A program made the position numbers and the translations under genes. This document shows, piece by piece, positions 39,173-54,421 of a DNA stretch of 64,000 nucleotides (the stretch's first letter is position 1; every line of letters begins with the position of its first letter). Location of the stretch: IMG/VR virus record IMGVR_UViG_3300030385_002649, positions 186,001 to 250,000 of that record. One strand, given 5' to 3'. The notes beneath the pieces are model-generated. The model searched no databases and was not told the DNA's origin. It saw nothing but the letters and a program-made list of their open reading frames with translations.

Positions 39173-39198
39173 GACGGCGGGAGCGCCCCGGCCTGTCA
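39173..39198 (-). promoter_or_regulatory. TGACA-N17-CGTC promoter-like motif
   Basis: exact match, upstream of tRNA-Arg. Confidence 0.65.
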
Positions 39199-39199
39199 T

Positions 39200-39571
39200 T
39201 CAGTCTTTGAGAAGCCAAAGCAAGGAGACTAGATGCGCAGGTTCGATTTCGGCATCGCCAAGATCTTCTAATGAAATTTGTTCAATATCCAAAGAAACTT
39301 CAAACCCTAACAATTCGGCATATTCTGCATTAAATTTAGCGACATCTTCAAAAACATACTGATTTTCTATGATGACTGGTTCGTCGTCTTCCCCTTTTAT
39401 AGCGTGCTTAAGTTGCAAGCTCTTTAAAGCGGTCTTATAATCTGTCAGTTCTTCTTCTACGATCCGCACAATTTTTGCGAGCTTGAAAGATGCTTTGATA
39501 GGCATTTTCAGTCCAATTAAGTTCTTAAATGCTTCAGCAGACCCTACAAGTTGTCTGTTGGTAACTTTCAC
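39200..39571 (-). CDS. DUF1617-like tail-fibre-associated protein
   Basis: LKMPIKASFKLAK...AELLGFEV pattern; follows fibre genes. Confidence 0.55.
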   Translation of the reverse strand: MKVTNRQLVGSAEAFKNLIGLKMPIKASFKLAKIVRIVEEELTDYKTALKSLQLKHAIKGEDDEPVIIENQYVFEDVAKFNAEYAELLGFEVSLDIEQISLEDLGDAEIEPAHLVSLLWLLKD

Positions 39572-39595
39572 CGTAATCTCCGACTTTTCGCCTAT

Positions 39596-40240
39596 TTACT
39601 CAGGAGTAATTGTACCATTCTCATAAACGGCCATCCAGTCGCCCTGCGTATTGCAGACTAGCTTTATACACGAACCAACCGCGCCTAACTCAATATAATT
39701 ATCATCCACCTGCTTACCAGCAGCAACAATGATCGCGTTAGACTCCGACGCGGTTGGTTGAACCCTCAGGATCTGATTATCCACGCGGTAGATCGTGAAA
39801 TTCTGCCCCTCGCTGGGGCCGCTAGGCAGTGTGATCGTTACTGTTCCAGCTGCACCGATGTTCGTCAGGACGGCGCCTGTGTCTTGCACATTAACTGTGC
39901 CGTCTGCGGTGAAATTAGTCGTGTTCAGTCTGAAGTTGTCGATTCGTCGAGTCTGGAAGTTCGTACCGTTTGCCGTGAAATAGGCAATCAAGGTGTTGTT
40001 GTTTTTGATCTCTACTTGCGCGAACGTGACATCCATTCCAATACCGGACCGCTCCCCGGCGTTTGTGCCACTAGCGAATCCATAAAATGCAATATCAGTA
40101 TAAACCAGACAACCGGTATCAACGTCGACGTCTCTAAATGTCACGCCCTGCCCGAGCGCAGGAGTCGACGTTGAGGCGATGATGCCATCGGGTGTCGTAG
40201 GCGAGCCACCGATATCAATTCGCGAAGTTTTAACTGTCAT
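39596..40240 (-). CDS. virion fibre-associated protein
   Basis: TNIGAAGTVTITLP beta-rich domain. Confidence 0.6.
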   Translation of the reverse strand: MTVKTSRIDIGGSPTTPDGIIASTSTPALGQGVTFRDVDVDTGCLVYTDIAFYGFASGTNAGERSGIGMDVTFAQVEIKNNNTLIAYFTANGTNFQTRRIDNFRLNTTNFTADGTVNVQDTGAVLTNIGAAGTVTITLPSGPSEGQNFTIYRVDNQILRVQPTASESNAIIVAAGKQVDDNYIELGAVGSCIKLVCNTQGDWMAVYENGTITPE

Positions 40241-40248
40241 GTGACCTC

Positions 40249-41481
40249 CTAAGTGGTCGGAGCGGTAAGGCTCATATAAGTGACGACGACGCGGATAGCG
40301 CCAGCCGTGAAATTGGATCCATTGGCCGTCAACACGACGTCGCCCGCAGCAGATCCCTGCCAGACCACCGTGTTATCGGTGTAGTCAGCAGGCTGGACGA
40401 GGGTTGCAGCCGTGAGGACAATGGCCGTACCCCAACGGTCAACGTCGGCTCCGTCACCCACGTCGAAGGTCGTAGCTCCAGTGATCGTAGTCGTGACCCT
40501 GGCGCTGACCCCGAGGACGAGGGCTCCTGCGGGGATCAAACTGGTTGCGGTCACCGTTGCGCCTGTGAGGCCCGAGAGGAGCGTCTCAGTGTGCTGGATT
40601 GTGCCGATTGCGGTATTCGTCGAAGTGACGCTTACTGCGCCCTGAACGTCGAGCCCTGCGGCGTTCACGGTCGCCTTGACCACACCAGCGTGCTCCATGA
40701 CAACCGAGCCATCGGCGCCTGATCCAGAAGCGGTACCTGGTTGAAGACAAATATTACCCGCATCTCCCGACGTTGCACCACCGTTGCCAGAGATCAAAAT
40801 GAGTTCTCCCGCAGATCCAGTCGTTCCTGCATTACCGGCAGTGAGTAAGAGTCCTCCTCCGCCCCCTGCGCCTATTCCACTGCCGCAGTCAATGTTGATC
40901 TCGCCGCCATTTCCGCCAGCACCAACGCCGTTAGCCGCGCTGAGATTGATAAAGCCGCCGTCACCTACGACCGGAACTCCGCCAGCAAGATCAACATTCC
41001 CTCCGTTCCCGGAAGTGGCGCCACCTGCACCACCGATAACGTTTACAGCCCCACCTTCGCCGGTCGCACCGCCCGCACCTGCGGTAAGTGCTAGGAGTCC
41101 TCCAGCACCTGAAGTGTTACCAGCGCCGGTGATAATTGATATAGCGGCACCAGCGGAGGTTGCAGTCGTAGCAGCGACACCGGTCAGGTAAAACGTTGTA
41201 GCTTCGAGGCCCGCGAGAATATCGAGGGCGCCGGTAGCGTTGCCAGCAATCAGGACTGAGGCGAGGTCAGAAGCTGCTGCGTCGCCTGGAGACCAAACAG
41301 ACCCTCCCCAAATAAGAACATCCCCAGGAGAAGGAACCTGCGTGCCGTCCGTATCGACGTCAGTGAGATCGTTTATACTCCCAACAGCAGAGCCAGTGGC
41401 TCCGGTCGGGCCGGAAGAACCAGTCGACCCGGTAGGTCCTGTGCCTCCAACCGGGACATAGTTTTCAATGTTCAAAGCCAT
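40249..41481 (-). CDS. collagen/glycine-rich tail fibre-like protein
   Basis: GxT repeats, LTDVD, Gly-rich repeats, C-terminal IPAGALVLGVSARV domain. Confidence 0.75.
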   Translation of the reverse strand: MALNIENYVPVGGTGPTGSTGSSGPTGATGSAVGSINDLTDVDTDGTQVPSPGDVLIWGGSVWSPGDAAASDLASVLIAGNATGALDILAGLEATTFYLTGVAATTATSAGAAISIITGAGNTSGAGGLLALTAGAGGATGEGGAVNVIGGAGGATSGNGGNVDLAGGVPVVGDGGFINLSAANGVGAGGNGGEINIDCGSGIGAGGGGGLLLTAGNAGTTGSAGELILISGNGGATSGDAGNICLQPGTASGSGADGSVVMEHAGVVKATVNAAGLDVQGAVSVTSTNTAIGTIQHTETLLSGLTGATVTATSLIPAGALVLGVSARVTTTITGATTFDVGDGADVDRWGTAIVLTAATLVQPADYTDNTVVWQGSAAGDVVLTANGSNFTAGAIRVVVTYMSLTAPTT

Positions 41482-41539
41482 AGTTTAACCCTACGGCCTA
41501 TCTTTGATGTCTAATTAAAAATTAGTCAAGCTCCTGCTT

Positions 41540-41782
41540 TTATAAAGACCTTAAGAGCACATCTAAACCAATTTCCCTAAAAATCTTCCCAGACACAGTA
41601 GGATGCTTCGGACCATAACTCTTGAAAGTGATTATAGCCTTATCAGGTACATTATTAACCAACCATTTAGCACAAACGCCAAGGTCATCATAACAAGCTA
41701 ATGGTCCATCAACATATATGCTATGCTTAGTGTCGAACGGACAATTATGACGATCCGGATGCGTGATCACAACTTTAGACAT
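41540..41782 (-). CDS. small hypothetical protein
   Basis: 80-aa ORF. Confidence 0.5.
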   Translation of the reverse strand: MSKVVITHPDRHNCPFDTKHSIYVDGPLACYDDLGVCAKWLVNNVPDKAIITFKSYGPKHPTVSGKIFREIGLDVLLRSL

Positions 41783-41945
41783 ATATTTTCTTGCTTAATG
41801 GCATTTTGGCCATTCTATATCCTTAAAAAAATCGTAATTGCAAAATTTGCCGACATAAAAAATGGTTTGCGGTTTATCATCTATCTTAGGCGGGGATGTC
41901 GCACACCCTACCAAGAAAACCGAAAAAATCAAAAGCCACTTCACA

Positions 41946-42018
41946 TAGGCGCGATGGGAATTGAACCCACAACCCCTCGAGTAAGAATCGAGTGCTCTGC
42001 CAATTGAGCTACGCACCT
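41946..42018 (-). tRNA. tRNA-Lys(CTT)
   Basis: canonical cloverleaf. Confidence 0.9.
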
Positions 42019-42032
42019 AAAACAAAAACAAA

Positions 42033-42106
42033 TACTCCTGGCGGGACTCGAACCCACAACCTGCGGCTTAGAAGGCCGACGCTCTATCCAATTGAGCTAC
42101 AAGAGC
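42033..42106 (-). tRNA. tRNA-Arg(TCT)
   Basis: canonical cloverleaf. Confidence 0.9.
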
Positions 42107-42132
42107 AAAATATATTTACCAATCTCCTTGAA

Positions 42133-42205
42133 TGACCCCGATTGGACTTGAACCAATGGCCTGAACTTTAGGAAAGTTCTGCTCTATCCGCTGAGCTACG
42201 GGGCC
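42133..42205 (-). tRNA. tRNA-Arg(CCT)
   Basis: canonical cloverleaf. Confidence 0.9.
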
Positions 42206-42438
42206 GAGTTGTCTTCTTCCAACATTTTGGCTTCGAGCTTCCAAAGCCTCTTGTAAGAATTTAAAATACAAAGGCCGCCGTAAACACCAACTATCGAGAA
42301 CACAATAAAAAATTTCGGGTCCAAATAGTAACCGGCGAAGAACAAACCGGCGAGAACACAATAAAAGAACCATTCATCGAAAAATGTGAAAAGCCTTTGA
42401 ACCAAAATGTATACCAATAGTCCACTTAGCTTTAGCAT
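42196..42438 (-). CDS. small membrane protein
   Basis: hydrophobic segments. Confidence 0.5.
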   Translation of the reverse strand: MLKLSGLLVYILVQRLFTFFDEWFFYCVLAGLFFAGYYLDPKFFIVFSIVGVYGGLCILNSYKRLWKLEAKMLEEDNSAP

Positions 42439-42460
42439 TTTTCATTTACTCACAATACAA

Positions 42461-42534
42461 TAGCTCGAATGGGAGTCGAACCCATAACATTTACGCCCTA
42501 AACGTAACGCCTCTGCCAATTGGGCTATCGAGCC
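42461..42534 (-). tRNA. tRNA-Leu(TAG), short variable arm
   Basis: loop TTTAGGG; class I length. Confidence 0.8.
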
Positions 42535-42610
42535 TTATGGACACATTTATGGCAGTATCCAGTTTTTGACCTCTTATAAATTTTAATTTCGCAAATTTTA
42601 CAAAGTCTTT

Positions 42611-42949
42611 CTATTTAAAAGAAGGTCTCTTCAATTGTCTAGTGGGCCACTCACTAGGAGGAAGTTCTTCATCGGGCTGAAGAGAAGGACCTTGTCCTAA
42701 CTCGCCAGGCATTTGAGCGTGTCCGATAGTCTCGGCCTGTTCGCTCTTCTCAAGCTTAGACGCAAATTGAAGGGTCAGTTGCATTAGATCCTTCAATGCA
42801 ACTTTAAGTTGAATCTTGTCATGCATTGAGTTTCCAAGATTCTCCATTGCATCTTGAAGATCGTGCCACAAAAAAGAAATGTCGTTATCATTGACGTTTA
42901 CGTCTTCTTCAGATAATAAACGTCGCCTTTGTACTGAGGAAAGTTTCAT
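42611..42949 (-). CDS. hypothetical late protein
   Basis: TAAAGATA just upstream; N-terminal RRLLSEE. Confidence 0.6.
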   Translation of the reverse strand: MKLSSVQRRRLLSEEDVNVNDNDISFLWHDLQDAMENLGNSMHDKIQLKVALKDLMQLTLQFASKLEKSEQAETIGHAQMPGELGQGPSLQPDEELPPSEWPTRQLKRPSFK

Positions 42950-42968
42950 GTTCTATCTTTAATCGGAG

Positions 42969-43052
42969 TATCCAGGATGGGAGTCGAACCCACACTTCCA
43001 AAAGGAAAACAGCCCCTCAAGCTGTCGCGTCTACCGATTCCGCCACCTGGAT
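42969..43052 (-). tRNA. tRNA-Leu(GAG)
   Basis: class II cloverleaf. Confidence 0.9.
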
Positions 43053-43055
43053 AAG

Positions 43056-43298
43056 TTATTTTGTTCGTCTTTGTGGCGATGACATTTTCTCTGCTTCACC
43101 ACTAGCCATAAGCTTTGGCGAAAAAATGTCAAGCTTGCCTTTGATAATTTTCAAGTTCCTCAAAAGTCGTTCGCCTCTTCTCGGCTCTATCACTCTATTG
43201 ACCGGAGTGCGAGACATTTGCAAAAGTGACTCGACTTCTTCGATGGTTGTCACCAATAATTCGCGCATTTCGCGTAAGTCTCTGAGAAGATTGATCAT
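43056..43298 (-). CDS. small hypothetical protein
   Basis: 80-aa ORF. Confidence 0.5.
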   Translation of the reverse strand: MINLLRDLREMRELLVTTIEEVESLLQMSRTPVNRVIEPRRGERLLRNLKIIKGKLDIFSPKLMASGEAEKMSSPQRRTK

Positions 43299-43464
43299 GT
43301 TCTATGTTTTCGCAACATTCATGACATGATCTCGTAGAACTCGGAAAGTGTGACAATATTCTTTTGTTGAGTTTGCCTTTTGTAACAATTGGTACGATGA
43401 GTGTTTGATAACATATAACGTCGCAACTTTTTTAGCAATCTCGAAAGAAAACCATTTTCTCATA

Positions 43465-43535
43465 CTGCCCCACGAGGTTTCGATCCCCGGTCTTCTAGTC
43501 CAAAGCCAGACGTAATCCCATTATACTATGGGGCA
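43465..43535 (-). tRNA. tRNA-Gln(TTG)
   Basis: cloverleaf, loop CTTTGGA. Confidence 0.8.
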
Positions 43536-43540
43536 TTATT

Positions 43541-43570
43541 GAAAATAAAGGGCCTTTGCGTAAGACCCTA
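43541..43570 (-). terminator. intrinsic terminator
   Basis: AGGGTCTT-ACGCA-AAGGCCCT followed by TTATTTT. Confidence 0.6.
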
Positions 43571-43636
43571 GATCCCTCCATTTTAGAAGGATCCTTTTGC
43601 TGTACCATAGACGATATTTCACGAATTAGATACAAG

Positions 43637-43720
43637 TGGAAGTGGAGGGATTCGAACCCCCTAAGCCATACGGCGCTAGATTTACAGTCTAGAGTAGCTC
43701 TCCAACTCTACAGCACGTCC
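43637..43720 (-). tRNA. tRNA-Tyr(GTA)
   Basis: class II cloverleaf. Confidence 0.85.
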
Positions 43721-43724
43721 ATAA

Positions 43725-43796
43725 TCGAGAGAAAAACAAGGTGAGTGTGTTGTCAAATTGCATAAATGTGAAGTAACTCATCTTTTCACTTCTCGA
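43725..43796 (-). ncRNA. Y-RNA-like element 1 (minimal, no tRNA module)
   Basis: shared GAAGTGA-N-GAGTTACTTC...ACAC...TTTTCTC stem. Confidence 0.6.
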
Positions 43797-43798
43797 AA

Positions 43799-43871
43799 CC
43801 CCCACGACCGGACTTGAACCGGCAACCTTTCGCGTGACAGGCGAGTGCTCCTCCAATTGAGCTACGTGGGG
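43799..43871 (-). tRNA. tRNA-Asp(GTC)
   Basis: canonical cloverleaf. Confidence 0.9.
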
Positions 43872-43877
43872 TTAATA

Positions 43878-43929
43878 GTGATGCTTTATTCTTTCAGTCC
43901 TACGGAAGCATCGCCCAAACCAAGGACTA
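43878..43929 (-). ncRNA. putative H-type pseudoknot
   Basis: interleaved stems AGTCCT/AGGACT and GATGCTT/AAGCATC. Confidence 0.45.
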
Positions 43930-43935
43930 ATAAGA

Positions 43936-44010
43936 CAGGGGCGACAGGACTCGAACCTGCAAATTCTTCGGCTTTGGAAACCGCTGCCCTACCAATTGAG
44001 CTACACCCCT
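43936..44010 (-). tRNA. tRNA-Trp(CCA)
   Basis: canonical cloverleaf. Confidence 0.9.
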
Positions 44011-44013
44011 AAA

Positions 44014-44156
44014 ATGTGAGAGAAAAACGAGAAAAGGTGTTTTTCTAAAAAAACTCGCCCATGTAGTGGACGAGGTTGGATTCGAACCAACATAAATAGA
44101 TTATTAGTCTAGTGTGTTACCATTTGGAAGTATCTCTTCTCAATCACTTCTCACAT
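44014..44156 (-). ncRNA. Y-RNA-like element 2 (anticodon arm AAT + T arm + closed acceptor hairpin)
   Basis: shared stem; GTTGG-TTCGAAT-CCAAC; CTCGTCCA/TGGGCGAG. Confidence 0.65.
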
Positions 44157-44158
44157 AA

Positions 44159-44230
44159 CGGGCAGAGAGGGATTTGAACCCCCGACTCTTGGTTCTTCAA
44201 ACCAATGTTCTTCCGCTGAACTACCTGCCC
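44159..44230 (-). tRNA. tRNA-Phe(GAA)
   Basis: canonical cloverleaf. Confidence 0.85.
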
Positions 44231-44254
44231 AAATCAAATTGTCAATACACTAAA

Positions 44255-44280
44255 GACGGAGAAACCGGGCATGCCTGTCA
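44255..44280 (-). promoter_or_regulatory. TGACA-N17-CGTC promoter-like motif
   Basis: exact match, upstream of tRNA-Phe. Confidence 0.65.
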
Positions 44281-44287
44281 CTTTCTT

Positions 44288-44599
44288 CTAAGAGCTTTCT
44301 GGCGTCTTCTTCATCAAAGTGCTTCTCATTTTCCCAACTTCATCGACCAAACCGGAAAGGCCGCTCTTTTCAAGCTCTTTCGGCGCAGAAGACCCAGACT
44401 TAGCCGAATTGATAATGACCCAAGCCAACCGGCAATCATCATTTTTCAACTGCGCTCTTCCGAGTCGTTCGCCTTCCTCTTCTAACCAATTCAAAGCTTT
44501 TGACCAGTGAGCGTCAGTGTTTTCTAAGGCTTTCCAAACAAGCATTCTAACTTTTTGAACGTGCTTGGTAATATCATCGTGTAAGACATCTAGTTTCAT
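44288..44599 (-). CDS. hypothetical protein
   Basis: 103-aa ORF. Confidence 0.55.
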   Translation of the reverse strand: MKLDVLHDDITKHVQKVRMLVWKALENTDAHWSKALNWLEEEGERLGRAQLKNDDCRLAWVIINSAKSGSSAPKELEKSGLSGLVDEVGKMRSTLMKKTPESS

Positions 44600-44600
44600 A

Positions 44601-44996
44601 CTATACCTTTACTTCTTTCCTACCATGAGTTAAAACAATCATAGGGCGACCTACAAACGTCTCAGTCCAAGTCTTAGCCCAAGGGCCCCTAATAGTAAAG
44701 CACCAACTATCCCTATGTGCTAAGACCCTGTGATTTTTACTCTTCTTAGTCAGCTTTGGAATTAAAGAACGACGATACCAATGCATCTCGCCAGAAACGT
44801 CTTCTTCTATAATAGCACCAAACAAGAACCAAGTTAAGGCGTTGAAAGCATGGGTGTGAAAAGCTTCTCTTCCGCCCTTATTAAACTTGAGCAACATAAC
44901 GCTACACAGCCATTTAATTTCAAAAAGCACGTATGCGTCAACTGGCGATTCTGGCCCGCCGTCTTTAACCTTACAAAAAAATCTCATTATTCCCAT
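44601..44996 (-). CDS. cupin-like hypothetical phage protein
   Basis: KDGGPESPV, REAFHTHAF, H.V...W.FT.RGPW. Confidence 0.65.
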   Translation of the reverse strand: MGIMRFFCKVKDGGPESPVDAYVLFEIKWLCSVMLLKFNKGGREAFHTHAFNALTWFLFGAIIEEDVSGEMHWYRRSLIPKLTKKSKNHRVLAHRDSWCFTIRGPWAKTWTETFVGRPMIVLTHGRKEVKV

Positions 44997-46504
44997 TCAA
45001 TCGTAGCTGGTGGTTTTGAAGAAATGTCATAACAAACTCTGTTTATGCCACGTACTTCGTTACAAATCTGACTAGAGATCCTACCTAAAAGTTCGTAATC
45101 GAGCTTAGACCAATCGGCGGTCATACCGTCCGTAGCATCAACTGCTCTAACGACGCAAGTATATTCATAAGTCCTACCATCTCCCATCACTCCGACTGAT
45201 TTAGTAGGAAGAAGAACGCAGAAATACTGCCATGGTCTGGTTTCTTTTGGGATGGCGTCGATCTCTTTACGAACAATTTTGTCCGCAGCCCTAAGAATCT
45301 CAAGCTTCTTTTCACTTATAGCGCCTAAAACGCGAATCGACAATCCTGGGCCTGGAAAAGGCTGTCTCTCAACAAGATGATCTGGAAGACCTAATTTCCT
45401 ACCGATTTCTCTAGCTTCATCTTTAAAGAGACTCCTCAAAGGCTCGATCAATTCGAATCCAAGGTCTTCCGGGAGACCGCCAACATTATGGTGACTTTTA
45501 ATTGTTTTGCTCAGCCCATCGTCTGACGAACTCTCGATTACGTCTGGATAAAGCGTTCCTTGTGCCAAAAATTTGGCCCCATCAATCTTCAGAGCCTCTT
45601 CCTTAAAGACGTCAATAAAGGCGGCGCCTATGATCTTTCTTTTTGTTTCGGGGTCTTCTACACCGTCTAATTTGGTGAGGAAGCGGTCTCTTGCGTCAGC
45701 AACAATGAATCGGTCCCCAAAGATGGGTTTGAAAGCCGCAGTCACTTCCTCGACTTCTTCAGCCCGGAGCAAGCCATTGTCGACCATAATGCAGACCAAC
45801 TGATCTCCAACAGCCTCATTAACCATTAAGGCAGTAACTGCAGAATCAACTCCTCCAGAAAGCCCACAGATGACCTTGCTGTCGCCAACTCTTTCTTTAA
45901 TCTTAGCAATCTCTTGCTCGACGAAAGTCCCTTCAAATTTTAACTCCTCACAATCACATATACCAGCAAAATTAGCAAGAATTTGCCTACCGAACTGGGT
46001 GTGAGCCACTTCCGGATGGAACTGAATTCCATAAATGTCTTTTCTCTCATGTTTAATAGCTGCATAATGAGTCGATTCTGTCATGGCGATCATGTCGAAG
46101 CCTACAGGAGGCAATTCAACGCTGTCGCCATGAGACATCCAAACTTGAGAGGTTTCCGTCAGTCCGTTCCATAATGGAACTTTCGAAACCAATTGTAATT
46201 TAGCCTTGCCGTATTCTCTTTTGTCGGATTGGTCGACATAACCGCCAATCGTCTTACACAATACTTGCATTCCATAACAAATGCCGAGGATCGGAGTTCC
46301 AAGATTGAGAATTCCGTAATCAAACTCTGGAGCGTTCTCATCATAAACAGAAGATGGGCTTCCTGACAATACTATACCGTCGTAAGCACGCAGGTCTTCA
46401 ACTTTTATCGCATTAGAAACAATTTCGCATAGAACATTTAGCTCGCCAAATCGTCTCGCGATCAATTTTGTAAATTGTGAACCGTAATCAATAATCGCGA
46501 TCAT
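44987..46504 (-). CDS. guaA: GMP synthase (glutamine-hydrolysing)
   Basis: DYGSQF, GICYGMQ, HPE, SGGVDS, HHNVGG, SKPPATIEWE; GGAGG SD before ATG 46504. Confidence 0.97.
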   Translation of the reverse strand: MIAIIDYGSQFTKLIARRFGELNVLCEIVSNAIKVEDLRAYDGIVLSGSPSSVYDENAPEFDYGILNLGTPILGICYGMQVLCKTIGGYVDQSDKREYGKAKLQLVSKVPLWNGLTETSQVWMSHGDSVELPPVGFDMIAMTESTHYAAIKHERKDIYGIQFHPEVAHTQFGRQILANFAGICDCEELKFEGTFVEQEIAKIKERVGDSKVICGLSGGVDSAVTALMVNEAVGDQLVCIMVDNGLLRAEEVEEVTAAFKPIFGDRFIVADARDRFLTKLDGVEDPETKRKIIGAAFIDVFKEEALKIDGAKFLAQGTLYPDVIESSSDDGLSKTIKSHHNVGGLPEDLGFELIEPLRSLFKDEAREIGRKLGLPDHLVERQPFPGPGLSIRVLGAISEKKLEILRAADKIVRKEIDAIPKETRPWQYFCVLLPTKSVGVMGDGRTYEYTCVVRAVDATDGMTADWSKLDYELLGRISSQICNEVRGINRVCYDISSKPPATIEWE

Positions 46505-48286: not shown

Positions 48287-48290
48287 CTCA

Positions 48291-48857
48291 TTACACAATA
48301 TGCGGATGAAGCAGAATCCTAATAGACTCCCTAATCCCAGCCGCAACATACTCAAAATTGACCGCCGTAGCAATCGTGATCGTAGTTAGAGGGCTTCTTT
48401 CGCCAGTGTCAGGATCCCTAACACCAAGCTTAAAATAATTCCTCAAATTCGTATTACTCCCGACCCTACTAATAGGGTTGATCCACCTATCTTCAACAGT
48501 CCAACTAGTCGAGCCATTAGCCAACTGTCTCAATGGACGGTACCGTTTACCCTTCCTGTCACTATAAACAGTGCCGCGAGAAGAATGAACGCCGCGAGCC
48601 TTCTTAATAAACTTATAAATCTCAACTTGTAAGCCAGCCGGATTGTCAAAATAAACGATGCCAGTCGTCCCATTGATTCCAATAATTACTGGAGGAAGAA
48701 GACCTCCACCGCTAACCCCATCAGCACCGGTTGGACCAGTTGGCCCCGTAGCACCAAAACCTCCGCCATCAACCCCTTGGATGATAACTCTTTCGATTGG
48801 GCCATTAACAAAAGGCTCATCTCTTACAATTTGCAAGTTTCTGATTTTATTGCTCAT
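48291..48857 (-). CDS. collagen-motif virion protein
   Basis: GATGPTGPTGADG. Confidence 0.6.
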   Translation of the reverse strand: MSNKIRNLQIVRDEPFVNGPIERVIIQGVDGGGFGATGPTGPTGADGVSGGGLLPPVIIGINGTTGIVYFDNPAGLQVEIYKFIKKARGVHSSRGTVYSDRKGKRYRPLRQLANGSTSWTVEDRWINPISRVGSNTNLRNYFKLGVRDPDTGERSPLTTITIATAVNFEYVAAGIRESIRILLHPHIV

Positions 48858-49041
48858 AATTTATTTATGCTTGGCCCGGCGGATCTGGATCGTGGGATTT
48901 GTGCCATAATTTCCAAGCGAGGACTTGGTAGCTGTGCCAACATTTGTGGAAACCAGACCCATAAACCTTGTCACACCGACAATTTTTATAGACACCCAAA
49001 GTGTTAGTCTTTCTCTAATTTTGAAAACTTATTTTGTAGGA

Positions 49042-49168
49042 TGATGAGAGAACTCTTGAAAAACCGTTAGTGTCAATTATGGGACTTGAACCCACAACAT
49101 GCAGCTTTGAAGGCTATTACTCTACCATTGAGTTAAATTGAAGTAAGTCTTTCTATCACTTCTCATCA
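49042..49168 (-). ncRNA. Y-RNA-like element 5 carrying a near-complete tRNA body with TCA anticodon
   Basis: shared stem; TCAATT/AATTGA, D arm, loop CTTCAAA, GTGGG-TTCAAGT-CCCAT. Confidence 0.65.
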
Positions 49169-49169
49169 A

Positions 49170-49263
49170 TGAATGGCAAAGGGATCGCACCTCTGTCCGA
49201 CAACCCGGGAAACATGAACAAGCTCCGCTGCGTTGGGTTGTCGTCCCCCTATGGGGCCCATTC
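49170..49263 (-). ncRNA. tRNA-like RNA with extended anticodon arm
   Basis: GAATGG/CCATTC, CCCC/GGGG, CGACAACCC/GGGTTGTCG, T-like arm. Confidence 0.5.
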
Positions 49264-49266
49264 TAA

Positions 49267-49830
49267 TCATTTTCTTGAAAACGTTTTGGTCTGAGAATGG
49301 CAATTAGGGCATAACCACCTCAAGTTTTCTAACCTATTATCGTTATTCTTCCCATTAATATGATCAATTTGAAGAATTAATGGTTTCCCATTATGAACAT
49401 CATCGCATTGACATGTCGAACAATGCGATGATCTTTGTTTCTTTTTAAATCTTCGTCTTAATGTAATCTGTGCTACTTTGCTATTTTCGCAAAACACTTG
49501 CCCGTCGGATTTTTTATTATCACGATTAAGAGCTTCGATAGCAACAATGTCGCCTGCAAAGTGATCGATATCAAGCTTAAGTCTTTTTATGTGTTTTTTG
49601 ATGCTTGTCCAATTATTCCCTCTTGCAGATAATCCCAATTTTGTAAGCAATTCAGTATAACATCGGCTTCCTTTAACGTTAATCTTTAACTGTTCATCTG
49701 TCCAAGTTCGATTGAATAGACCATAAGGGGAACAATCAAAACAATATCTGCGACTAGTAGCCGATTTCCATTTTCCATCAATTTTTATATGAGTTTTAAA
49801 TTCTTGCTTACAACCTTTACAAATCTTCAT
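49267..49830 (-). CDS. HNH endonuclease
   Basis: LQIDHINGKNNDNRLENLRWLCPNCH; starts directly after tRNA-Pro. Confidence 0.9.
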   Translation of the reverse strand: MKICKGCKQEFKTHIKIDGKWKSATSRRYCFDCSPYGLFNRTWTDEQLKINVKGSRCYTELLTKLGLSARGNNWTSIKKHIKRLKLDIDHFAGDIVAIEALNRDNKKSDGQVFCENSKVAQITLRRRFKKKQRSSHCSTCQCDDVHNGKPLILQIDHINGKNNDNRLENLRWLCPNCHSQTKTFSRK

Positions 49831-49831
49831 A

Positions 49832-49906
49832 TCAGAGCGGTGAGATTCGAACTCACGATCTCGACATCCCAAATGTCGCGCCTTGGCCAGACTAGGCTAC
49901 GCTCTG
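49832..49906 (-). tRNA. tRNA-Pro(TGG)
   Basis: canonical cloverleaf. Confidence 0.9.
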
Positions 49907-49970
49907 TTATTGTGTCATGATGATATGCCAGCTAAGTATACTTTACTTTGTGCCACGTCATTTCTTTTTA

Positions 49971-50053
49971 CGCTCGTTGTTGGAGTCGAACCAACGCGAA
50001 CCGCCCCTCCGTGTCCACAAAAGGCACACAGCGCAAAGATCTACCCTACGAGC
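49971..50053 (-). ncRNA. aberrant tRNA-like RNA
   Basis: GCTCGT/ACGAGC, GTTGG-TTCGACT-CCAAC, irregular D and anticodon arms. Confidence 0.5.
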
Positions 50054-50550
50054 TTGACCATCATACTATTATAACTTCCATCTCGCCATTACCAATCGTT
50101 GTGGTGCCAGACTTCAAAGAACAAAATGGAATCCATCCTGCACGACGAGCAACAAAATCAATCAACTTCTTACCACCAAGAACCATCAACGGGCTACTAC
50201 TAGCACCATCTTTGTTGATCATCCTGAACCGGTCACCAGGCTTCAATTTCTTCAACTTCATCTTCGTCTCCTTAAGCAATGCTCCGGTACTGCCCCGGTC
50301 ATACGGGGTTGCAACCCGTCGCCTCTCTATTCTGGCCCGCAATGCAAGCGTAGCCGCCTCACTAATACCTAACGTGGTAATCGTGAAATAACCCCGGGCG
50401 ACCAACCCGAGTTTCACCTTCACTTTCGGATGGTCAATCCTCAGAATCGGTAGCGTCTACTGTTTTGGTAATTTGTCCGCGTCGAGCTTGATGGCCCGAA
50501 ATTAACAAGTGACTAGCCTGTCTTTCAAAATAGTCAGTTTTCGCGAACGA

Positions 50551-50622
50551 TGAGCAATGAGGGATTCGAACCCACAACCTTGAGCATGTAACACTCCTGC
50601 GCTGCCGTTGCGCCAATCGCCC
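50551..50622 (-). tRNA. tRNA-Val(TAC)
   Basis: cloverleaf. Confidence 0.85.
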
Positions 50623-51051
50623 TTACTTATGAAGAAATTTATACCAACTTTGATCTTTAGCCGTTTTCCTACTATGACAATTGGCACATCTGACTTCACA
50701 TTTTTCAATCTCTTCTAATAACTTGTCTATCCTTGAATAACGTATGAGTTTAGAAATAGGAGCTTTTTTATCTCTAAGATGGTCGAATTCGAGAACTGTC
50801 GGATCCGATTCTCCACAATCAACACAGGGGTGTTTTAACAAATGCTCTAATATGAATTTCCTATTTTCCAATCTTCTATTTGTGTTATAAATTCTTACTC
50901 TGTCTTTTGTTTTCCCTTCATCATTTTGGTATATCTTTTTTCTATAAATCTTAAAACATGATCGACACATCGATTGTAAGGAAACGTTTGTCTTCTTCCA
51001 ATTAAATTCCGATTTTAATTTTTCCTTCTTACATCGGTTACAAATCTTCAT
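50623..51051 (-). CDS. HNH endonuclease
   Basis: CVDCG...LEFDH...CEVRCANCH; stop abuts tRNA-Val. Confidence 0.9.
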   Translation of the reverse strand: MKICNRCKKEKLKSEFNWKKTNVSLQSMCRSCFKIYRKKIYQNDEGKTKDRVRIYNTNRRLENRKFILEHLLKHPCVDCGESDPTVLEFDHLRDKKAPISKLIRYSRIDKLLEEIEKCEVRCANCHSRKTAKDQSWYKFLHK

Positions 51052-51521
51052 GAGATTATGTACGCTTTTTTGTCCTCCTGAAATACCCAGAAGAATGAAC
51101 TGGATGAATTCCAGATTGTTGATCCAGCATTGAAACTGTCCCTCGCGGTTTAACAGTAAAAATGGACCTAAAAGCCCAAATGTTCCAAGAAAGCCACTTT
51201 CTAGGTTTATCCAACCCGTAAAGCTCGTTGAAGTTCCTCAAATCTCTTCTCATTTATTCCCCTTCTTAGATCCGTATTTTGGTCTGTAAAACTCGATTAA
51301 AGATGGGACTCGGTTCTCACCTGGGATGATACCGAATTTATTGAAAACCCATATGCTGTAAGACTTCCAAGCCCTGGTTCGCATTTCGTTATCTCTTTCA
51401 AGTTGCATTTTTGGAGCGCACCCAAGGGAATCTCTCCGCACGGATTAAGGTTTCGACGTATCAACCTTTTGGAATACCAATATCTCATTTTACAATTCCT
51501 AATCGATAGAATACTGCTTAA

Positions 51522-51595
51522 TGGAGCTAATGGGATTCGAACCCACGCGTGACCCGGCGTGCAAAACCAGCGCTCTCCCACTGAGCTATAGCCCC
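51522..51595 (-). tRNA. tRNA-Ala(TGC)
   Basis: GGGGCTA start, G3-U70. Confidence 0.9.
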
Positions 51596-51755
51596 TGGCG
51601 TCTGGGTTAACTCCAAAATTAGTTATCTCCAAGTTAATCGCTTAATAGGCGACGCTCAAGGCATTCACTTCTTCTGGCCAGACATGTTTAGAGGGCAGTC
51701 GCCGCCTGCATACTGGACCATGTCTCCAGCGCTTGGACAGCTAAACATACCGCAA

Positions 51756-51829
51756 TGACCCTGACGAGACTCGAACTCGCAACGTCCAGCTTGAAAGGCT
51801 GGCGATCTAACCGATTGATCTACAGGGCC
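51756..51829 (-). tRNA. tRNA-Glu(TTC)
   Basis: canonical cloverleaf. Confidence 0.9.
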
Positions 51830-51893
51830 AAACGAGAAGTGACACCAGCGTTCCCGACTATCACGCCGGGTGCATACAATGCCAAATCTCTCA

Positions 51894-51967
51894 TGACCCC
51901 TACCGGATTTGAACCGGTGTTTCAAGCGTGAGAGGCTTGCGTCCTAACCAGACTAGACGAAGGGGCC
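51894..51967 (-). tRNA. tRNA-Glu(CTC)
   Basis: canonical cloverleaf. Confidence 0.9.
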
Positions 51968-52019
51968 ACATGGCAAACTAAATTGTTAATGATCGTCAAG
52001 AACAAAAAGTTCTATCGAA

Positions 52020-52092
52020 AGCTGGGGAAGGGACTTGAACCCATAACCTGCGACTTACAAAATCGCTGCTCTACCAATTGAGCTACCCCAGC
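52020..52092 (-). tRNA. tRNA-Thr(TGT)
   Basis: canonical cloverleaf. Confidence 0.9.
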
Positions 52093-52105
52093 AAAAAGGG
52101 AGCAG

Positions 52106-52366
52106 TCAATTCGCAGTGACTGCCGCCTCGGGTTTTGGTTCAAAGAAATTGACGAACGCTTCAACAACTTGGTCTGGGGTTTGATGCCTAAGAAGCATCT
52201 CCCTGTCCATGTATTCTGGTTGTAAAGCGAAGGCTCTCATGCGAAGCAATCCATCATGTTCTACAACAAATTTGAATGTGACATTAGGTAGCGTTTCCTC
52301 AAGTCTAGCGCAGAGAACTTTCGTCTCTTCAGAATGAGGCGCGTATCTGTAATCTTCCATCTTCAT
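52106..52366 (-). CDS. hypothetical protein
   Basis: 86-aa ORF downstream of a promoter motif. Confidence 0.6.
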   Translation of the reverse strand: MKMEDYRYAPHSEETKVLCARLEETLPNVTFKFVVEHDGLLRMRAFALQPEYMDREMLLRHQTPDQVVEAFVNFFEPKPEAAVTAN

Positions 52367-52378
52367 TGTAATACCTTA

Positions 52379-52404
52379 GACGAGAACAAGCTGCATGCCT
52401 GTCA
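52379..52404 (-). promoter_or_regulatory. TGACA-N17-CGTC promoter-like motif
   Basis: exact match. Confidence 0.65.
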
Positions 52405-52488
52405 TTTTCTCTTTGATGACTCTTACATACAACGCGTTGAAAATTGACCACTAAACATTTGTCCTACAATACAACACAAAAATTAAGT

Positions 52489-53106
52489 ATGAATCTAATC
52501 CAAACAGTCCAAAAAGGTGCCCCAAAAAAGTCTCATAATCAATATGTCCAATCAATCATAGACATATTGAGCAAATGCCCATTCCCAGGACTAATTATAG
52601 AATTGGGGGTTGCACACGGAAGAAACGCAATAATAATCGGGAACACAATCAAAGCTTTAAAACTAGACACGAAATATGTTGGTTTCGACACATTTGTTGG
52701 CTATGCTCAAGAAGATATGGACAACAAAGCTTTGAAAGATATCCAACGCCGAAAAGTTTGGCATACAACAAAAGAAAAAGTAGAAGACACAATTTCTAAA
52801 GCCGGACTATCAGACATTTGTACTCTGATAGAAGGAGATTTAAAAGAAACTCTCCCACAATTCTTAATAGAACACAATCCGGAAATTGCTCTGCTTTATA
52901 TCGACTGCAACGCATATCTACCATCAATTACCGGGATGACAGCTACAATAGGACATGTCAAAAGGGGTAGCATCATATGTATAGACGAACATCGAATAGG
53001 AGGAGAAACAAAAGCCCTAGAAGAATTCAGCAAAACGATGAAACACCGAATAACTAAAACAGGAGACACAATTGGCATCCCAGCCTATATCAAGGTTGGT
53101 GGTTAA
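52489..53106 (+). CDS. TylF/MycF-like O-methyltransferase
   Basis: IELGVAHG, GFDTFVG, G...ETLP.F, LLYIDCNAY, IDE. Confidence 0.8.
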   Translation: MNLIQTVQKGAPKKSHNQYVQSIIDILSKCPFPGLIIELGVAHGRNAIIIGNTIKALKLDTKYVGFDTFVGYAQEDMDNKALKDIQRRKVWHTTKEKVEDTISKAGLSDICTLIEGDLKETLPQFLIEHNPEIALLYIDCNAYLPSITGMTATIGHVKRGSIICIDEHRIGGETKALEEFSKTMKHRITKTGDTIGIPAYIKVGG

Positions 53107-53720
53107 GGGCGACAATGGCCTCTAATAACCATACGTTCTCCTCCATTGATACGACCACCTTTATGTATCACGTCAGTAGAGAAAATCATCAACGTTCCAG
53201 CCTTTGCTAAGACTGTCTCTTCTTTATTAACGAGTTTTAATAAATCAGGATGATCACGAAGTTGGTGTTTACGACTCAGTCTCAACTTCGCCCCTATATT
53301 CGCTGAATTAGGGATATATGAGAACGGACCGTCATGTGGGCCGACATCTTTCAAATAAATCATAAATTTAAAAGCATGGTCGCGGTCTGAATGCCAATAG
53401 CCGTTTGGCGCGTCTCCTGGTATCCCAAATTCGTGCGACAAAAAAACAGCAGTATTAAACTTAAACGGTGTCCGCCCATAAAAATGCCTAGCGGCGACGA
53501 GCATTTCTTTTGAATTGAATATTTCTTTTATGGCGACCAAATCGTCTGGAATACCATATAATCTGACTGCTCTGCCAAAGCCGTATGGCTTAGCTCTATC
53601 TTCTAGAATGGCTTCATATTCCGATCTAACACTATTGATTTCTTCTTCGTTTAGGAAATCGGGGATCACTACTATTTTATTTTTTTTGAGTGATTTTAGA
53701 TAGGGGTCGATGTTTAACAT
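53103..53720 (-). CDS. PhyH-like 2OG-Fe(II) dioxygenase
   Basis: WHSD, YLKDV...GPF.YIP.S, AGT..IF...IHKGG, R. Confidence 0.85.
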   Translation of the reverse strand: MLNIDPYLKSLKKNKIVVIPDFLNEEEINSVRSEYEAILEDRAKPYGFGRAVRLYGIPDDLVAIKEIFNSKEMLVAARHFYGRTPFKFNTAVFLSHEFGIPGDAPNGYWHSDRDHAFKFMIYLKDVGPHDGPFSYIPNSANIGAKLRLSRKHQLRDHPDLLKLVNKEETVLAKAGTLMIFSTDVIHKGGRINGGERMVIRGHCRP

Positions 53721-53736
53721 GCCCTATATTTTCGGA

Positions 53737-53808
53737 AGCGGCCAGTGGGATTCGAACCCACGACATCGAGCTTGGAAGGCTCGCGTTCTCCCGCTGAACT
53801 ATGGCCGC
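53737..53808 (-). tRNA. tRNA-Gly(TCC)
   Basis: canonical cloverleaf. Confidence 0.9.
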
Positions 53809-53819
53809 ATTACCCCATA

Positions 53820-53845
53820 GACGAATCTATGAGGCTTGACTGTCA
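53820..53845 (-). promoter_or_regulatory. TGACA-N17-CGTC promoter-like motif
   Basis: exact match, 11 nt before tRNA-Gly. Confidence 0.7.
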
Positions 53846-53851
53846 CCAGTC

Positions 53852-54025
53852 TCAGTCGGCAGTCGTAGTAGGAGCTACTCCGCTGGTAACTGGAGCAACT
53901 TCACTCGTTACCGGAGCAACCCCAAGGGCACCACGGAACGCGTCAACTGCATCACCACCGAAAAAATATCCGGCAACAGCGAGAACTACTACAGCAACAA
54001 TACCAACAACACGCTTGTCCTTCAT
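53852..54025 (-). CDS. 57-aa membrane peptide with VAPVTS repeats
   Basis: AGGAGG SD; MKDKRVVGIVAVVVLAVAGYFFGG...VAPVTSEVAPVTSGVAPTT. Confidence 0.65.
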   Translation of the reverse strand: MKDKRVVGIVAVVVLAVAGYFFGGDAVDAFRGALGVAPVTSEVAPVTSGVAPTTTAD

Positions 54026-54057
54026 ATAAACCTCCTAATGGTTCAAAATCTGAAATA

Positions 54058-54270
54058 CTAAATGGGACGCCTTCTGCCGCGTCCAACTGGAATTTTGCCC
54101 CAACGAAGCTCCGCATAACATTCTCTACAATGCGCAGCGTATTTTGGTATCCCACTGTGGTGAACAACCTTGACCGGGTCTCCACAAGCAGCGCAAGATG
54201 GCCTGGTTTCCTCGGGATCTACATTTCTGTAGGCGTAAGGGCCATAACCCTCATGATCGTCATTATTCAT
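54058..54270 (-). CDS. small CxxC protein
   Basis: CAAC...CREC. Confidence 0.5.
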   Translation of the reverse strand: MNNDDHEGYGPYAYRNVDPEETRPSCAACGDPVKVVHHSGIPKYAAHCRECYAELRWGKIPVGRGRRRPI

Positions 54271-54312
54271 ATAATTATATACACTTTCCTATGCTAAATT
54301 ATGTGAATCTAA

Positions 54313-54384
54313 AGCGGCAGATGGGATTTGAACCCACGACTTCAACCTTGGCAAGGTTGCGCTCTACCACTGAGCTACTGCCGC
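54313..54384 (-). tRNA. tRNA-Gly(GCC)
   Basis: canonical cloverleaf. Confidence 0.9.
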
Positions 54385-54395
54385 ATTACTCTTTA

Positions 54396-54421
54396 GACGC
54401 TAACGAACATCCTCGGTGTCA
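54396..54421 (-). promoter_or_regulatory. TGACA-N17-CGTC promoter-like motif
   Basis: exact match, 11 nt before tRNA-Gly. Confidence 0.7.

What the first reader, a model, noticed from the sequence alone, without database searches (positions are those of the whole stretch)
39173..54421. Strict TGACA-N17-CGTC promoter motif heading tRNA units
Seen: five exact minus-strand matches with identical 17-nt spacing (39173, 44255, 52379, 53820, 54396). Four lie directly upstream of tRNA genes, and two sit exactly 11 nt from the tRNA 5' end. A variant lies near 43610. Known: CGTC -10 elements typify ECF sigma promoters. Inference: the tRNA array is driven by an alternative sigma, either from the host or the sigma-like gene at 26493.
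Basis: partly seen in the sequence, partly recalled or inferred. Interest (0 to 1): 0.6.

Follow-up and report, generated by a model that had tools for sequence, protein, structure and literature searches.

The report
Phage promoter class heading tRNA units
An uncultivated 371-kb T4-like phage carries eight near-identical promoter-like sites, seven in its tRNA gene array and one before a Ro60-like RNA quality-control gene, which look built for an alternative sigma factor that the phage may encode itself.

Summary
The motif is real and stronger than reported. TGACA-N17-CGTC occurs 7 times in the window, not 5. All 7 lie on the minus strand within 18 kb, against 0.33 expected. The whole 370,804-bp genome adds only two plus-strand hits that look like chance. 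A weight-matrix scan finds one more member outside the window, CGACAGGC-N14-CCGTCTA, 49 nt upstream of a TROVE (Ro60-like) gene. The full consensus has three parts: TGACAGGc, a fixed 17-nt spacer to CGTCTA, then GTA 7 nt later. That fits -35, -10 and a +1 A lying 3-4 nt before three mature tRNA 5' ends. Sites sit after a terminator, after stop codons and in two divergent intergenic gaps. They show no common RNA fold. The -10 resembles ECF-type CGTC promoters, but the -35 lacks AAC. The genome has no detectable RNA polymerase or canonical sigma. ORF 26493-27488 has no Pfam hit, yet its predicted fold matches sigma region 2 and region 4. No transcript data could be obtained, relatives at about 50% identity lack the motif, and other copies are 100% identical. 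So promoter function, and the link to that ORF, remain inferences.

The parts
54396..54421 (-). Site s7: TGACA-N17-CGTC, continued by TA and GTAAT. Predicted +1 is the A at 54387, 3 nt before tRNA-Gly(GCC), whose 5' end is at 54384.
   Evidence: It directly follows terminator-like hairpin 54436-54459. Leave-one-out score is 20.1 bits against 16.8 for the best non-site.
53820..53845 (-). Site s6. Predicted +1 is the A at 53811, 3 nt before tRNA-Gly(TCC), whose 5' end is at 53808. The unit continues into PhyH-like ORF 53103-53720.
   Evidence: It starts 6 nt after the stop codon of ORF 53852-54025. Leave-one-out score 23.5.
52379..52404 (-). Site s5, in the 77-nt divergent gap between the TylF-like methyltransferase gene (+, 52444-53106) and the 86-aa ORF 52106-52366. 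That ORF is followed by tRNAs Thr, Glu, Glu and Ala. Predicted +1 is the A at 52372, 6 nt before the ATG.
   Evidence: The strand switch means a minus-strand promoter is needed here. Leave-one-out score 19.0.
48536..48561 (-). Site s4, core only (CGTCC, no GTA element), inside the 188-aa ORF 48291-48857. A triple-repeat structure, pseudo-tRNAs and tRNA-Asn lie downstream.
   Evidence: This is the weakest member: leave-one-out 17.1 against 19.0 for the best non-site.
44255..44280 (-). Site s3. Predicted +1 is the A at 44246, 15 nt before tRNA-Phe (44158-44231). The unit ends at terminator 44054-44074.
   Evidence: It starts 7 nt after the stop codon of ORF 44288-44599. Leave-one-out score 28.3.
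39173..39198 (-). Site s2. Predicted +1 is the A at 39164, 4 nt before tRNA-Arg(ACG), whose 5' end is at 39160; tRNA-His follows.
   Evidence: It starts 1 nt after the stop codon of ORF 39200-39571. Leave-one-out score 18.1.
36555..36580 (-). Site s1, core only (CGTCC, no GTA element). It lies within a possible 81-aa ORF (36499-36744), about 145 nt upstream of ORF 35862-36410.
   Evidence: Leave-one-out score 19.3 against 14.8.
43610..43635 (-). Partial variant TTGTA-N17-CGTCTATGGTA between tRNA-Tyr and tRNA-Gln. The -10 and start-site half match; the -35 does not.
   Evidence: It is not among the high-scoring weight-matrix hits.
26493..27488 (+). ORF P0001 (331 aa), a candidate divergent sigma factor. 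It has a helical N-terminal domain (about 20-120), an inserted alpha/beta domain (about 121-217) and a C-terminal helix-turn-helix domain (about 242-331).
   Evidence: No Pfam or PHROG hit. AF2 pLDDT is 81 for the whole protein and 87.5 for the N-terminal domain. The C-terminal domain matches sigmaE region 4 at Z 7.5, rmsd 2.7, 66 of 69 residues. The N-terminal domain alone gives ECF sigma region 2 as top hits among 48,161 chains, with SigE NTD at Z 6.5, rmsd 2.8, 80 of 80. Language-model neighbours are viral Sigma70_r2 clusters.
54436..54459 (-). Terminator-like hairpin with a T-run after tRNA-Met (54471-54544), immediately upstream of s7.
   Evidence: 10 pairs, loop of 4.
44054..44074 (-). 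Terminator-like hairpin followed by seven T, closing the s3/tRNA-Phe unit.
34923..54544 (-). The tRNA array (28 of the window's 29 ARAGORN tRNAs, plus Rfam extras), interspersed with small ORFs, HNH endonucleases and GuaA. Every tRNA from 54384 downward lies downstream of one of the seven sites, apart from the single plus-strand methyltransferase gene that lies between s6 and s5.

Best explanation
These are eight copies of one phage-specific promoter class. Its parts are a -35 element TGACAGGc, an invariant 17-nt spacer, a -10 element CGTCTA, and a start-site element GTA whose A is the predicted +1. They start short transcription units in the tRNA array; three begin only 3-4 nt before a mature tRNA 5' end. 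They also start one unit for a Ro60-like (TROVE) gene elsewhere in the genome. The -10 cannot serve a housekeeping sigma, and the phage has no RNA polymerase of its own. Host core polymerase is therefore presumably directed here by an alternative sigma of two-domain, ECF-like type. The best candidate is the phage's own divergent sigma-like protein at 26493-27488. Shown: the motif, its statistics, its positions and the fold resemblance. Inferred: that transcription starts there, and which sigma reads it.
For: Enrichment and strand bias are strong: 7 observed against 0.33 expected, all on the transcribed strand, and the pair is the top de novo two-block motif. The weight-matrix scan gives a closed class: eight sites score 26-37 bits and the next best scores 17. 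The eighth site entered that matrix out of register and was still recovered. Its clean leave-one-out score is the highest of all, at 29.6. GTA is conserved 7 nt after the hexamer in five sites and 5 nt after it in a sixth, which gives a pyrimidine-purine start at the usual distance. Placement fits promoters: after a terminator (s7), 1-7 nt after stop codons (s2, s3, s6), and in two divergent intergenic gaps where a promoter is required (s5; the eighth site). The sites share no RNA fold. The tRNA region otherwise has a single intergenic extended -10 match. CGTC is a documented -10 for B. subtilis ECF sigmas M, X, V and W (PMC5758882). No RNAP beta or Sigma70_r2 was found in the genome; the T7-type RNAP search also found nothing, but its control rang in no genome. 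The phage has a T4-like core (Gp23), a group reported to lack RNAP but to encode sigmas (PMC7824862). P0001 has sigma2- and sigma4-like folds.
Against: The motif cannot be tested by comparison. Relatives carrying P0001 homologues at 30-50% identity show no enrichment of it, and the copies from other samples are 100% identical. The structural Z-scores for P0001 (6.5-8) are in the range the tool calls 'middling'. Foldseek on the N-terminal domain alone was not significant, and no Pfam sigma model passes. P0001 has no copy of the motif upstream, unlike typical autoregulated ECF sigmas. Two sites (s1, s4) lie inside ORFs and lack the downstream elements. Terminator-like hairpins sit just before tRNA-Thr and tRNA-Gln inside presumed units.
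Confidence: 0.6

Rival explanations
1. The sites are promoters, but a host alternative (ECF-type) sigma induced during infection reads them, not a phage protein. P0001 would then serve another class, for example the GTATTTAA sites.
For: The CGTC -10 and 17-nt spacing match bacterial ECF promoters. The motif is not conserved where P0001 homologues are conserved. A second, more widespread promoter-like class (GTATTTAA, 13-53 nt before many genes, also seen in relative G001) needs a factor too.
Against: The host is unknown. GuaA gives no host signal, being 50-57% identical to many phyla. Host ECF sigmas are normally held inactive, and the typical AAC in the -35 is absent. GTATTTAA-type sites have no -35, whereas P0001 has a region-4-like domain that implies -35 reading.
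Confidence: 0.2
2. The two blocks are the binding site of a phage DNA-binding regulator (activator or repressor) that overlaps promoters of another kind.
For: The class is unusually strict, with no excess of one-mismatch variants, as for operator sites. The genome encodes other helix-turn-helix proteins, for example the 613-aa ORF with Sigma70_r4/HTH hits.
Against: The motif is asymmetric and lacks the dyad or direct-repeat form of operators. Its spacing and the third element match -35/-10/+1 geometry. No alternative -10 lies at a usable distance, because a TAAT-type -10 would place the start inside the tRNA.
Confidence: 0.1
3. The matches are passive copies from duplication of tRNA cassettes or mobile elements (HNH endonuclease traffic), or they are an RNA processing signal, with no role in initiation.
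For: s6 and s7 precede two tRNA-Gly genes and share the 15 nt after CGTC. s3 and s5 share TGACAGGCATGC. HNH genes and tRNA fragments litter the array.
Against: The 17-nt spacers and the flanks differ between sites, and the eighth site precedes a protein gene 60 kb away. No common hairpin exists: fold z-scores run from -2.0 to +1.0.
Confidence: 0.07

Closest known systems
ECF (group 4) sigma promoters, e.g. Bacillus subtilis sigma M/X/V/W (-35 TGAAAC or GCAAAC, -10 CGTC or CGTA; PMC5758882)
   Same: Two short blocks with a rigid 16-17 nt spacer, a CGTC -10, a small regulon with high information content, and a two-domain sigma (regions 2 and 4).
   Different: The -35 is TGACAGG, which has no AAC and is closer to the sigma-70 TTGACA. 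The targets are tRNA genes and a Ro60 homologue, not envelope-stress genes. The candidate sigma is phage-encoded, carries an extra alpha/beta domain, and has no adjacent anti-sigma and no autoregulatory copy of the motif.
Phage-encoded sigma cascades (SPO1 gp28 and gp33/34, T4 gp55 with TATAAATA; recalled knowledge) and the sigmas of RNAP-less 'group 2' jumbo phages (PMC7824862)
   Same: A T4-like jumbo phage without its own RNAP that appears to redirect host core polymerase to its own promoter class.
   Different: The consensus is unrelated to the T4 late motif: TATAAATA is not enriched and never intergenic here. The class has only eight members and is tied to stable-RNA genes rather than to a temporal gene block.
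The phage T4 tRNA cluster (recalled knowledge: polycistronic precursors from upstream early/middle promoters, then RNase P processing)
   Same: Phage tRNA genes are clustered on one strand and partly co-transcribed.
   Different: Here several tRNAs have a private promoter-like site 11-23 nt upstream. That predicts leaders of only 3-15 nt.
Bacterial and phage rsr (Ro60/TROVE) loci with tRNA-like Y RNAs (PMC4201824)
   Same: A TROVE-domain gene in a phage, functionally associated with tRNA-like RNAs.
   Different: No Y RNA was detected within 4 kb by Rfam. The link to tRNAs here is a shared promoter-like motif, which those loci are not reported to have.

Membership tests
ECF-type sigma-dependent promoter | -10 element CGT(C/A) | tested here: met
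   CGTC is invariant in all eight sites and extends to CGTCTA in four of them. Literature consensus in PMC5758882.
ECF-type sigma-dependent promoter | -35 element containing AAC (e.g. GGAAC or TGAAAC) | tested here: not met
   The -35 block is (T/C)GACAGG in seven sites and TGACACC in one. None has AAC.
ECF-type sigma-dependent promoter | Rigid spacer of about 16-17 nt between the blocks | tested here: met
   The spacer is exactly 17 nt in all eight sites. Other spacings are at background.
ECF-type sigma-dependent promoter | Mapped start site about 6-8 nt downstream of the -10, dependent on the cognate sigma | not testable with these tools
   There is only an indirect hint: a conserved GTA with its A 7 nt after the hexamer.
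Sigma-70 housekeeping promoter | -10 hexamer TATAAT-like, with A at position 2 and T at position 6 | tested here: not met
   The hexamer at the 17-nt spacing is CGTC followed by TA, AA, TT, CA or CT. The consensus scan shows no excess of sigma-70-type sites in the region: 34 found against 31.6 expected.
T4-type late promoter (gp55) | TATAAATA at -10 with no -35 | tested here: not met
   TATAAATA occurs 11 times in the genome against about 23 expected, and never in an intergenic position.
Sigma-70 family protein (ORF 26493-27488) | Region 4 helix-turn-helix domain | tested here: met
   Residues about 250-331 align to sigmaE region 4 (2h27_D: Z 7.5, rmsd 2.7, 66 of 69) and to sigmaF region 4 (8jzt_C: Z 7.5, rmsd 2.2, 63 of 64).
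Sigma-70 family protein (ORF 26493-27488) | Region 2 helical domain | tested here: inconclusive
   In a Foldseek-independent search, about 16 of the top 23 of 48,161 chains are sigma region 2 domains, mostly ECF. Z is only 5.2-6.5, and Foldseek on this domain was not significant.
Sigma-70 family protein (ORF 26493-27488) | Sequence signature (Pfam Sigma70_r2 / r4) | tested here: not met
   No Pfam or PHROG hit. Only Sigma70_r3 appears, at E 0.022, in 4 of 20 family members. The profile against PDB and against E. coli RpoD is not significant.
Sigma-70 family protein (ORF 26493-27488) | Binds RNAP core and directs initiation | not tested
   The host is unknown, and no complex prediction was attempted.
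Ro60/Rsr (gene behind the eighth site) | TROVE domain | tested here: met
   PF05731, E 2.7e-13, over the cut-off.
Ro60/Rsr (gene behind the eighth site) | Y RNA encoded within about 4 kb on the same strand | tested here: inconclusive
   No Rfam match around the gene at either the gathering or the E<=1 threshold. Divergent Y RNAs are known to escape such models (PMC4201824).

The most novel reading that the evidence does not exclude
A huge marine-type phage devotes a private, highly divergent sigma factor (sigma2 and sigma4 folds plus an inserted domain, invisible to Pfam) to a small 'stable-RNA regulon'. The regulon would comprise its own tRNA genes and a Ro60 RNA-surveillance gene. The promoters would be placed so that pre-tRNAs start only 3-4 nt before the mature 5' end. 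tRNA supply and RNA quality control would then switch on together and largely independently of host promoters.
Probability: 0.3. Interest if true: 0.65.

Novelty: new variant of a known kind. Interest (0 to 1): 0.45.

Why it matters
Large phages carry dozens of tRNA genes, but how and when these are expressed is almost unstudied outside T4. A closed, high-information promoter class that couples tRNA units to a Ro60 homologue would give a concrete, testable handle on that question. The test needs only eight sites and one candidate sigma. It would also add an orthogonal sigma/promoter pair from a protein family that current domain libraries do not recognise as sigma.

Tried and rejected
- Cultured relatives: none. 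Megablast and tblastn against 50,697 phage records found nothing.
- First IMG/VR attempts: the PhyH-like protein and a promoter-plus-tRNA-Gly pattern found no relatives.
- Footprinting in relatives: five IMG/VR relatives were then found through the P0001 family. They show no enrichment of the motif, and two-block enumeration on 80 kb of G001 and 59 kb of G003 found no convincing equivalent. The best candidate, TCGCA-17-GTCA with 6 hits, is scattered and mostly looks coding. The relatives also lack a TROVE gene.
- Strain-level footprinting: copies in runs ERR599373 and ERR2752159 are 100% identical over 11-20 kb, so they carry no information.
- Host inference from GuaA: uninformative.
- RNA-hairpin reading of the motif: rejected.
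- Sigma-70, T4-late and MotA-type readings: rejected on the -10 sequence.
- Sequence-level proof that P0001 is a sigma: failed.
- The 613-aa ORF with Sigma70_r4 hits next to the capsid gene: it has only N-terminal helix-turn-helix motifs and I did not pursue it as a sigma.
- One family-scan call was malformed and returned nothing.
Full report
**Context.** The window is bases 186001-250000 of a 370,804-bp virus record with direct terminal repeats and 45% G+C. The record encodes a Gp23-type major capsid protein, a T4-type prohead protease and SbcCD-like nucleases, so its core is T4-like. It carries 34 tRNA genes; 29 lie on the minus strand of the window. It has no close cultured relative. The same sequence, 100% identical over 11-20 kb, occurs in contigs from runs ERR599373 and ERR2752159 and in JGI sample 3300030385.

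**The observation.** TGACA-N17-CGTC occurs seven times in the window, all on the minus strand between 36555 and 54421. Shuffles give a mean of 0.33 and a maximum of 2. The whole genome adds only two plus-strand matches: one inside a gene, the other overlapping the ATG and first codons of what reads as a small membrane-protein ORF. Spacings of 15, 16, 18 and 19 give 0-6 matches per strand over 371 kb. About 0.1 match is therefore expected on one strand of this 18-kb stretch. Counting every 5-mer/gap/4-mer pair in the tRNA region, without prior choice, ranks this pair first. The distances to tRNA 5' ends are as stated: 11 nt for both tRNA-Gly genes, 12 nt for tRNA-Arg(ACG) and 23 nt for tRNA-Phe.

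**Fuller anatomy.** Aligning the sites shows more than the nine named bases: TGACAGGc, then the spacer, then cCGTCTA, then GTA(A/T)T.
- A weight matrix scanned over both strands of the genome separates eight sites, at 26-37 bits, from everything else, at 17 bits or less.
- The eighth site is G000 152618-152593 on the minus strand, outside the window. It reads CGACAGGC-N14-CCGTCTA followed by TTTGGTATT. It had entered that matrix out of register yet was still recovered.
- In clean leave-one-out tests the eighth site scores highest, at 29.6 bits. Seven of the eight sites beat every non-site in the genome. Only the site at 48561 does not (17.1 against 19.0).
- One-mismatch variants of the core are not enriched, so the class is closed and strict.
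- In five sites the A of GTA lies 7 nt after the CGTCnn hexamer, and in a sixth 5 nt after it. That is the usual distance from a -10 hexamer to a start site, with pyrimidine at -1 and purine at +1.
- The predicted starts are 54387, 53811, 52372, 44246 and 39164, plus G000 152584. These give leaders of 3, 3 and 4 nt for tRNA-Gly(GCC), tRNA-Gly(TCC) and tRNA-Arg, 15 nt for tRNA-Phe, and 6 nt before the ATG of an 86-aa ORF.

**Position.**
- Site 54421 follows, within 15 nt, a 10-pair hairpin with a T-run that ends the tRNA-Met unit.
- Sites 39198, 44280 and 53845 begin 1-7 nt after stop codons of upstream ORFs.
- Site 52404 lies in the 77-nt gap between a plus-strand TylF-like methyltransferase gene and the minus-strand ORF and tRNAs (Thr, Glu, Glu, Ala) that follow. 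Minus-strand transcription must restart there.
- The eighth site likewise lies in a divergent gap. It is 49 nt upstream of the ATG, and before a Shine-Dalgarno sequence, of a 549-aa protein with a TROVE (Ro60) domain. A cpYpsA/SLOG gene follows.
- The tRNA-Phe unit ends at a strong terminator, a hairpin with seven T at 44074-44054.
- Sites 36580 and 48561 differ from the rest. They lie inside ORFs, read CGTCC and lack the GTA element. They may be internal or weak members.
- The 'variant near 43610' has the -10 and start-site half only.

**What it is not.**
- The blocks do not form a shared RNA structure; fold z-scores run from -2.0 to +1.0, with different pairings at each site.
- The spacers and flanks differ between sites, so these are not simple duplicated cassettes.
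- A housekeeping -10 is absent at the right spacing. The only TAAT-like strings sit so close to the tRNAs that initiation would fall inside them.
- The T4 late motif is under-represented and never intergenic.
- The genome does have other promoter-like classes elsewhere. Extended -10 sites (TGGTATAGT, TGGTTTAG) crowd a small-ORF region at 333-345 kb. GTATTTAA lies 13-53 nt before many genes on both strands. In the tRNA region only one intergenic extended -10 match exists, at 36493.

**Who reads it.** Searches of all six frames found no RNAP beta domain and no Sigma70_r2. A search for T7-type RNAP also found nothing, but its control rang in no genome, so it is uninformative. T4-like jumbo phages are reported to lack RNAP and to encode sigmas (PMC7824862). 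CGTC is the -10 of several B. subtilis ECF sigmas, paired with an AAC-containing -35 at 16-17 nt (PMC5758882). The -10 and spacing here agree with that pattern; the -35 does not.

The ORF at 26493-27488 (P0001) has no Pfam or PHROG match. It belongs to a family of about 25 metagenomic proteins at 33-57% identity. Three lines of evidence point to a sigma:
- With that alignment, AlphaFold gives pLDDT 81. Nearly all the best Foldseek and VIA-align matches are sigma factors, and residues about 250-331 cover sigmaE and sigmaF region 4 almost completely at 2.2-2.7 A.
- The N-terminal 125 residues, folded alone (pLDDT 87.5), were compared with 48,161 representative chains without Foldseek. The top of the list is ECF sigma region 2: sigmaH, SigE N-terminal domain, AlgU, SigR, SigW and SigK, at Z 6.0-6.5.
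- Language-model neighbours are viral clusters carrying Sigma70_r2.

The Z-scores are modest, Foldseek on the N-terminal domain alone was not significant, and sequence-profile tests fail. 'Divergent sigma' is therefore well supported at fold level but not proven. A TTGACA with an AT-rich -10-like string lies upstream of the gene; this is weak evidence that host sigma-70 expresses it first.

**Link between sigma and sites.** This link is inference only. Two relatives keep the arrangement of a P0001 homologue followed 4-5 kb later by a tRNA array on the opposite strand. None shows the motif or a clear substitute. The predicted recognition helix differs between homologues, which would allow different specificities. 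A host alternative sigma remains a live rival, and the host could not be inferred.

**Assessment.** The sequence evidence that this is a promoter class is strong for six sites and weaker for two. I put the promoter reading at about 0.8. That an alternative sigma reads it follows from the -10. That this sigma is P0001 I put at roughly 0.45. The kind of thing, a phage-specific promoter class read through a phage sigma on host polymerase, is known. New here are three features: the consensus itself, its restriction to tRNA units plus a Ro60 gene, and start sites predicted only 3-4 nt from mature tRNA ends. An unrecognised sigma-like family with an inserted domain adds to this.

Noticed in passing
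G000:C1:150895-152618 (L030:4895-6618, minus strand), outside the window: A 549-aa TROVE/Ro60-like gene followed by a cpYpsA/SLOG gene. It is headed by the eighth copy of the motif. No Y RNA was found by Rfam within 4 kb.
   Followed up: partly
window 48180-48290 (-): Three exact 23-nt direct repeats (GGAGAACATCAAGTCTGTCCCAC) at 33-nt spacing, enclosed by a 13-bp inverted repeat. The predicted RNA fold is -45.6 kcal/mol. They lie between ORF 48291-48857 and two pseudo-tRNAs, and could be a structured RNA with repeated SD-like protein- or ribosome-binding motifs.
   Followed up: partly
window 49162, 48056, 47025, 43792 (-): A hairpin family GAAGTGA-N(7-9)-TTACTTC, with a G-U wobble in the stem. 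It is found four times in the genome, all in the tRNA array, each just 5' of a tRNA or tRNA-like sequence.
   Followed up: partly
window ~46925-46990 (-): A tRNA 3' half (T arm plus TTTCGCCA), a 5-nt linker, then a tRNA 5' half (GGCGAAA plus D arm), with complementary acceptor strands. This is either a permuted-looking tRNA gene or debris from a tandem duplication. Neither ARAGORN nor Rfam calls it.
   Followed up: no
window 47940-47960, 46895-46925, 44012-44050, 43721-43760 (-): A pyrimidine-rich element (aACAC ... TTTTCTC(T/C) ... ATT) directly 5' of tRNA-Asn, Lys(UUU), Trp and Tyr. tRNA-Trp sits just behind the tRNA-Phe terminator. It may be a second promoter or processing signal for tRNAs that lack the TGACA site.
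   Followed up: partly
window 49070-49142 (-) and 30974-31049 (-): A 73-nt tRNA with anticodon UCA, labelled 'SeC' by ARAGORN but too short for that, so it looks like an opal suppressor. There is also a tRNA with a four-base anticodon (uaag). Capsid and other long genes are intact under code 11, so general recoding is not indicated.
   Followed up: no
window 47963-48032 and 48065-48145 (-): Rfam finds two extra tRNA-like sequences (48.3 and 28.9 bits) that ARAGORN does not call. The first has a GAA anticodon and a defective T arm.
   Followed up: partly
G000 333-345 kb (-), and genome-wide: There are two further promoter-like classes. Extended -10 TGGTATAGT/TGGTTTAG sites are packed among small ORFs with a GTAGGTGT Shine-Dalgarno sequence, which looks like an early region. 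GTATTTAA lies 13-53 nt before many genes on both strands, e.g. window 55592 before the helicase gene, and is also seen in relative G001.
   Followed up: partly
window 52101-52124 and 43549-43569 (-): Terminator-like hairpins with T-runs end 1-8 nt (tRNA-Thr) and 13 nt (tRNA-Gln) before the tRNA 5' ends, inside presumed transcription units. They could be attenuators or processing structures.
   Followed up: no
window 44987-46564, 52444-53106, 53103-53720, 54888-55568: Metabolic and modification genes are embedded in the tRNA array: GMP synthase, a TylF-like methyltransferase (the only plus-strand gene there), a PhyH-like dioxygenase and a SET-domain protein.
   Followed up: partly
window 36499-36744 vs 36695-37066 (-): An 81-aa ORF with a plausible charged coiled-coil sequence overlaps the end of the cupin-like ORF by 50 nt in another frame. 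This may be a frameshift or a mis-split gene. Motif site s1 lies inside it.
   Followed up: no
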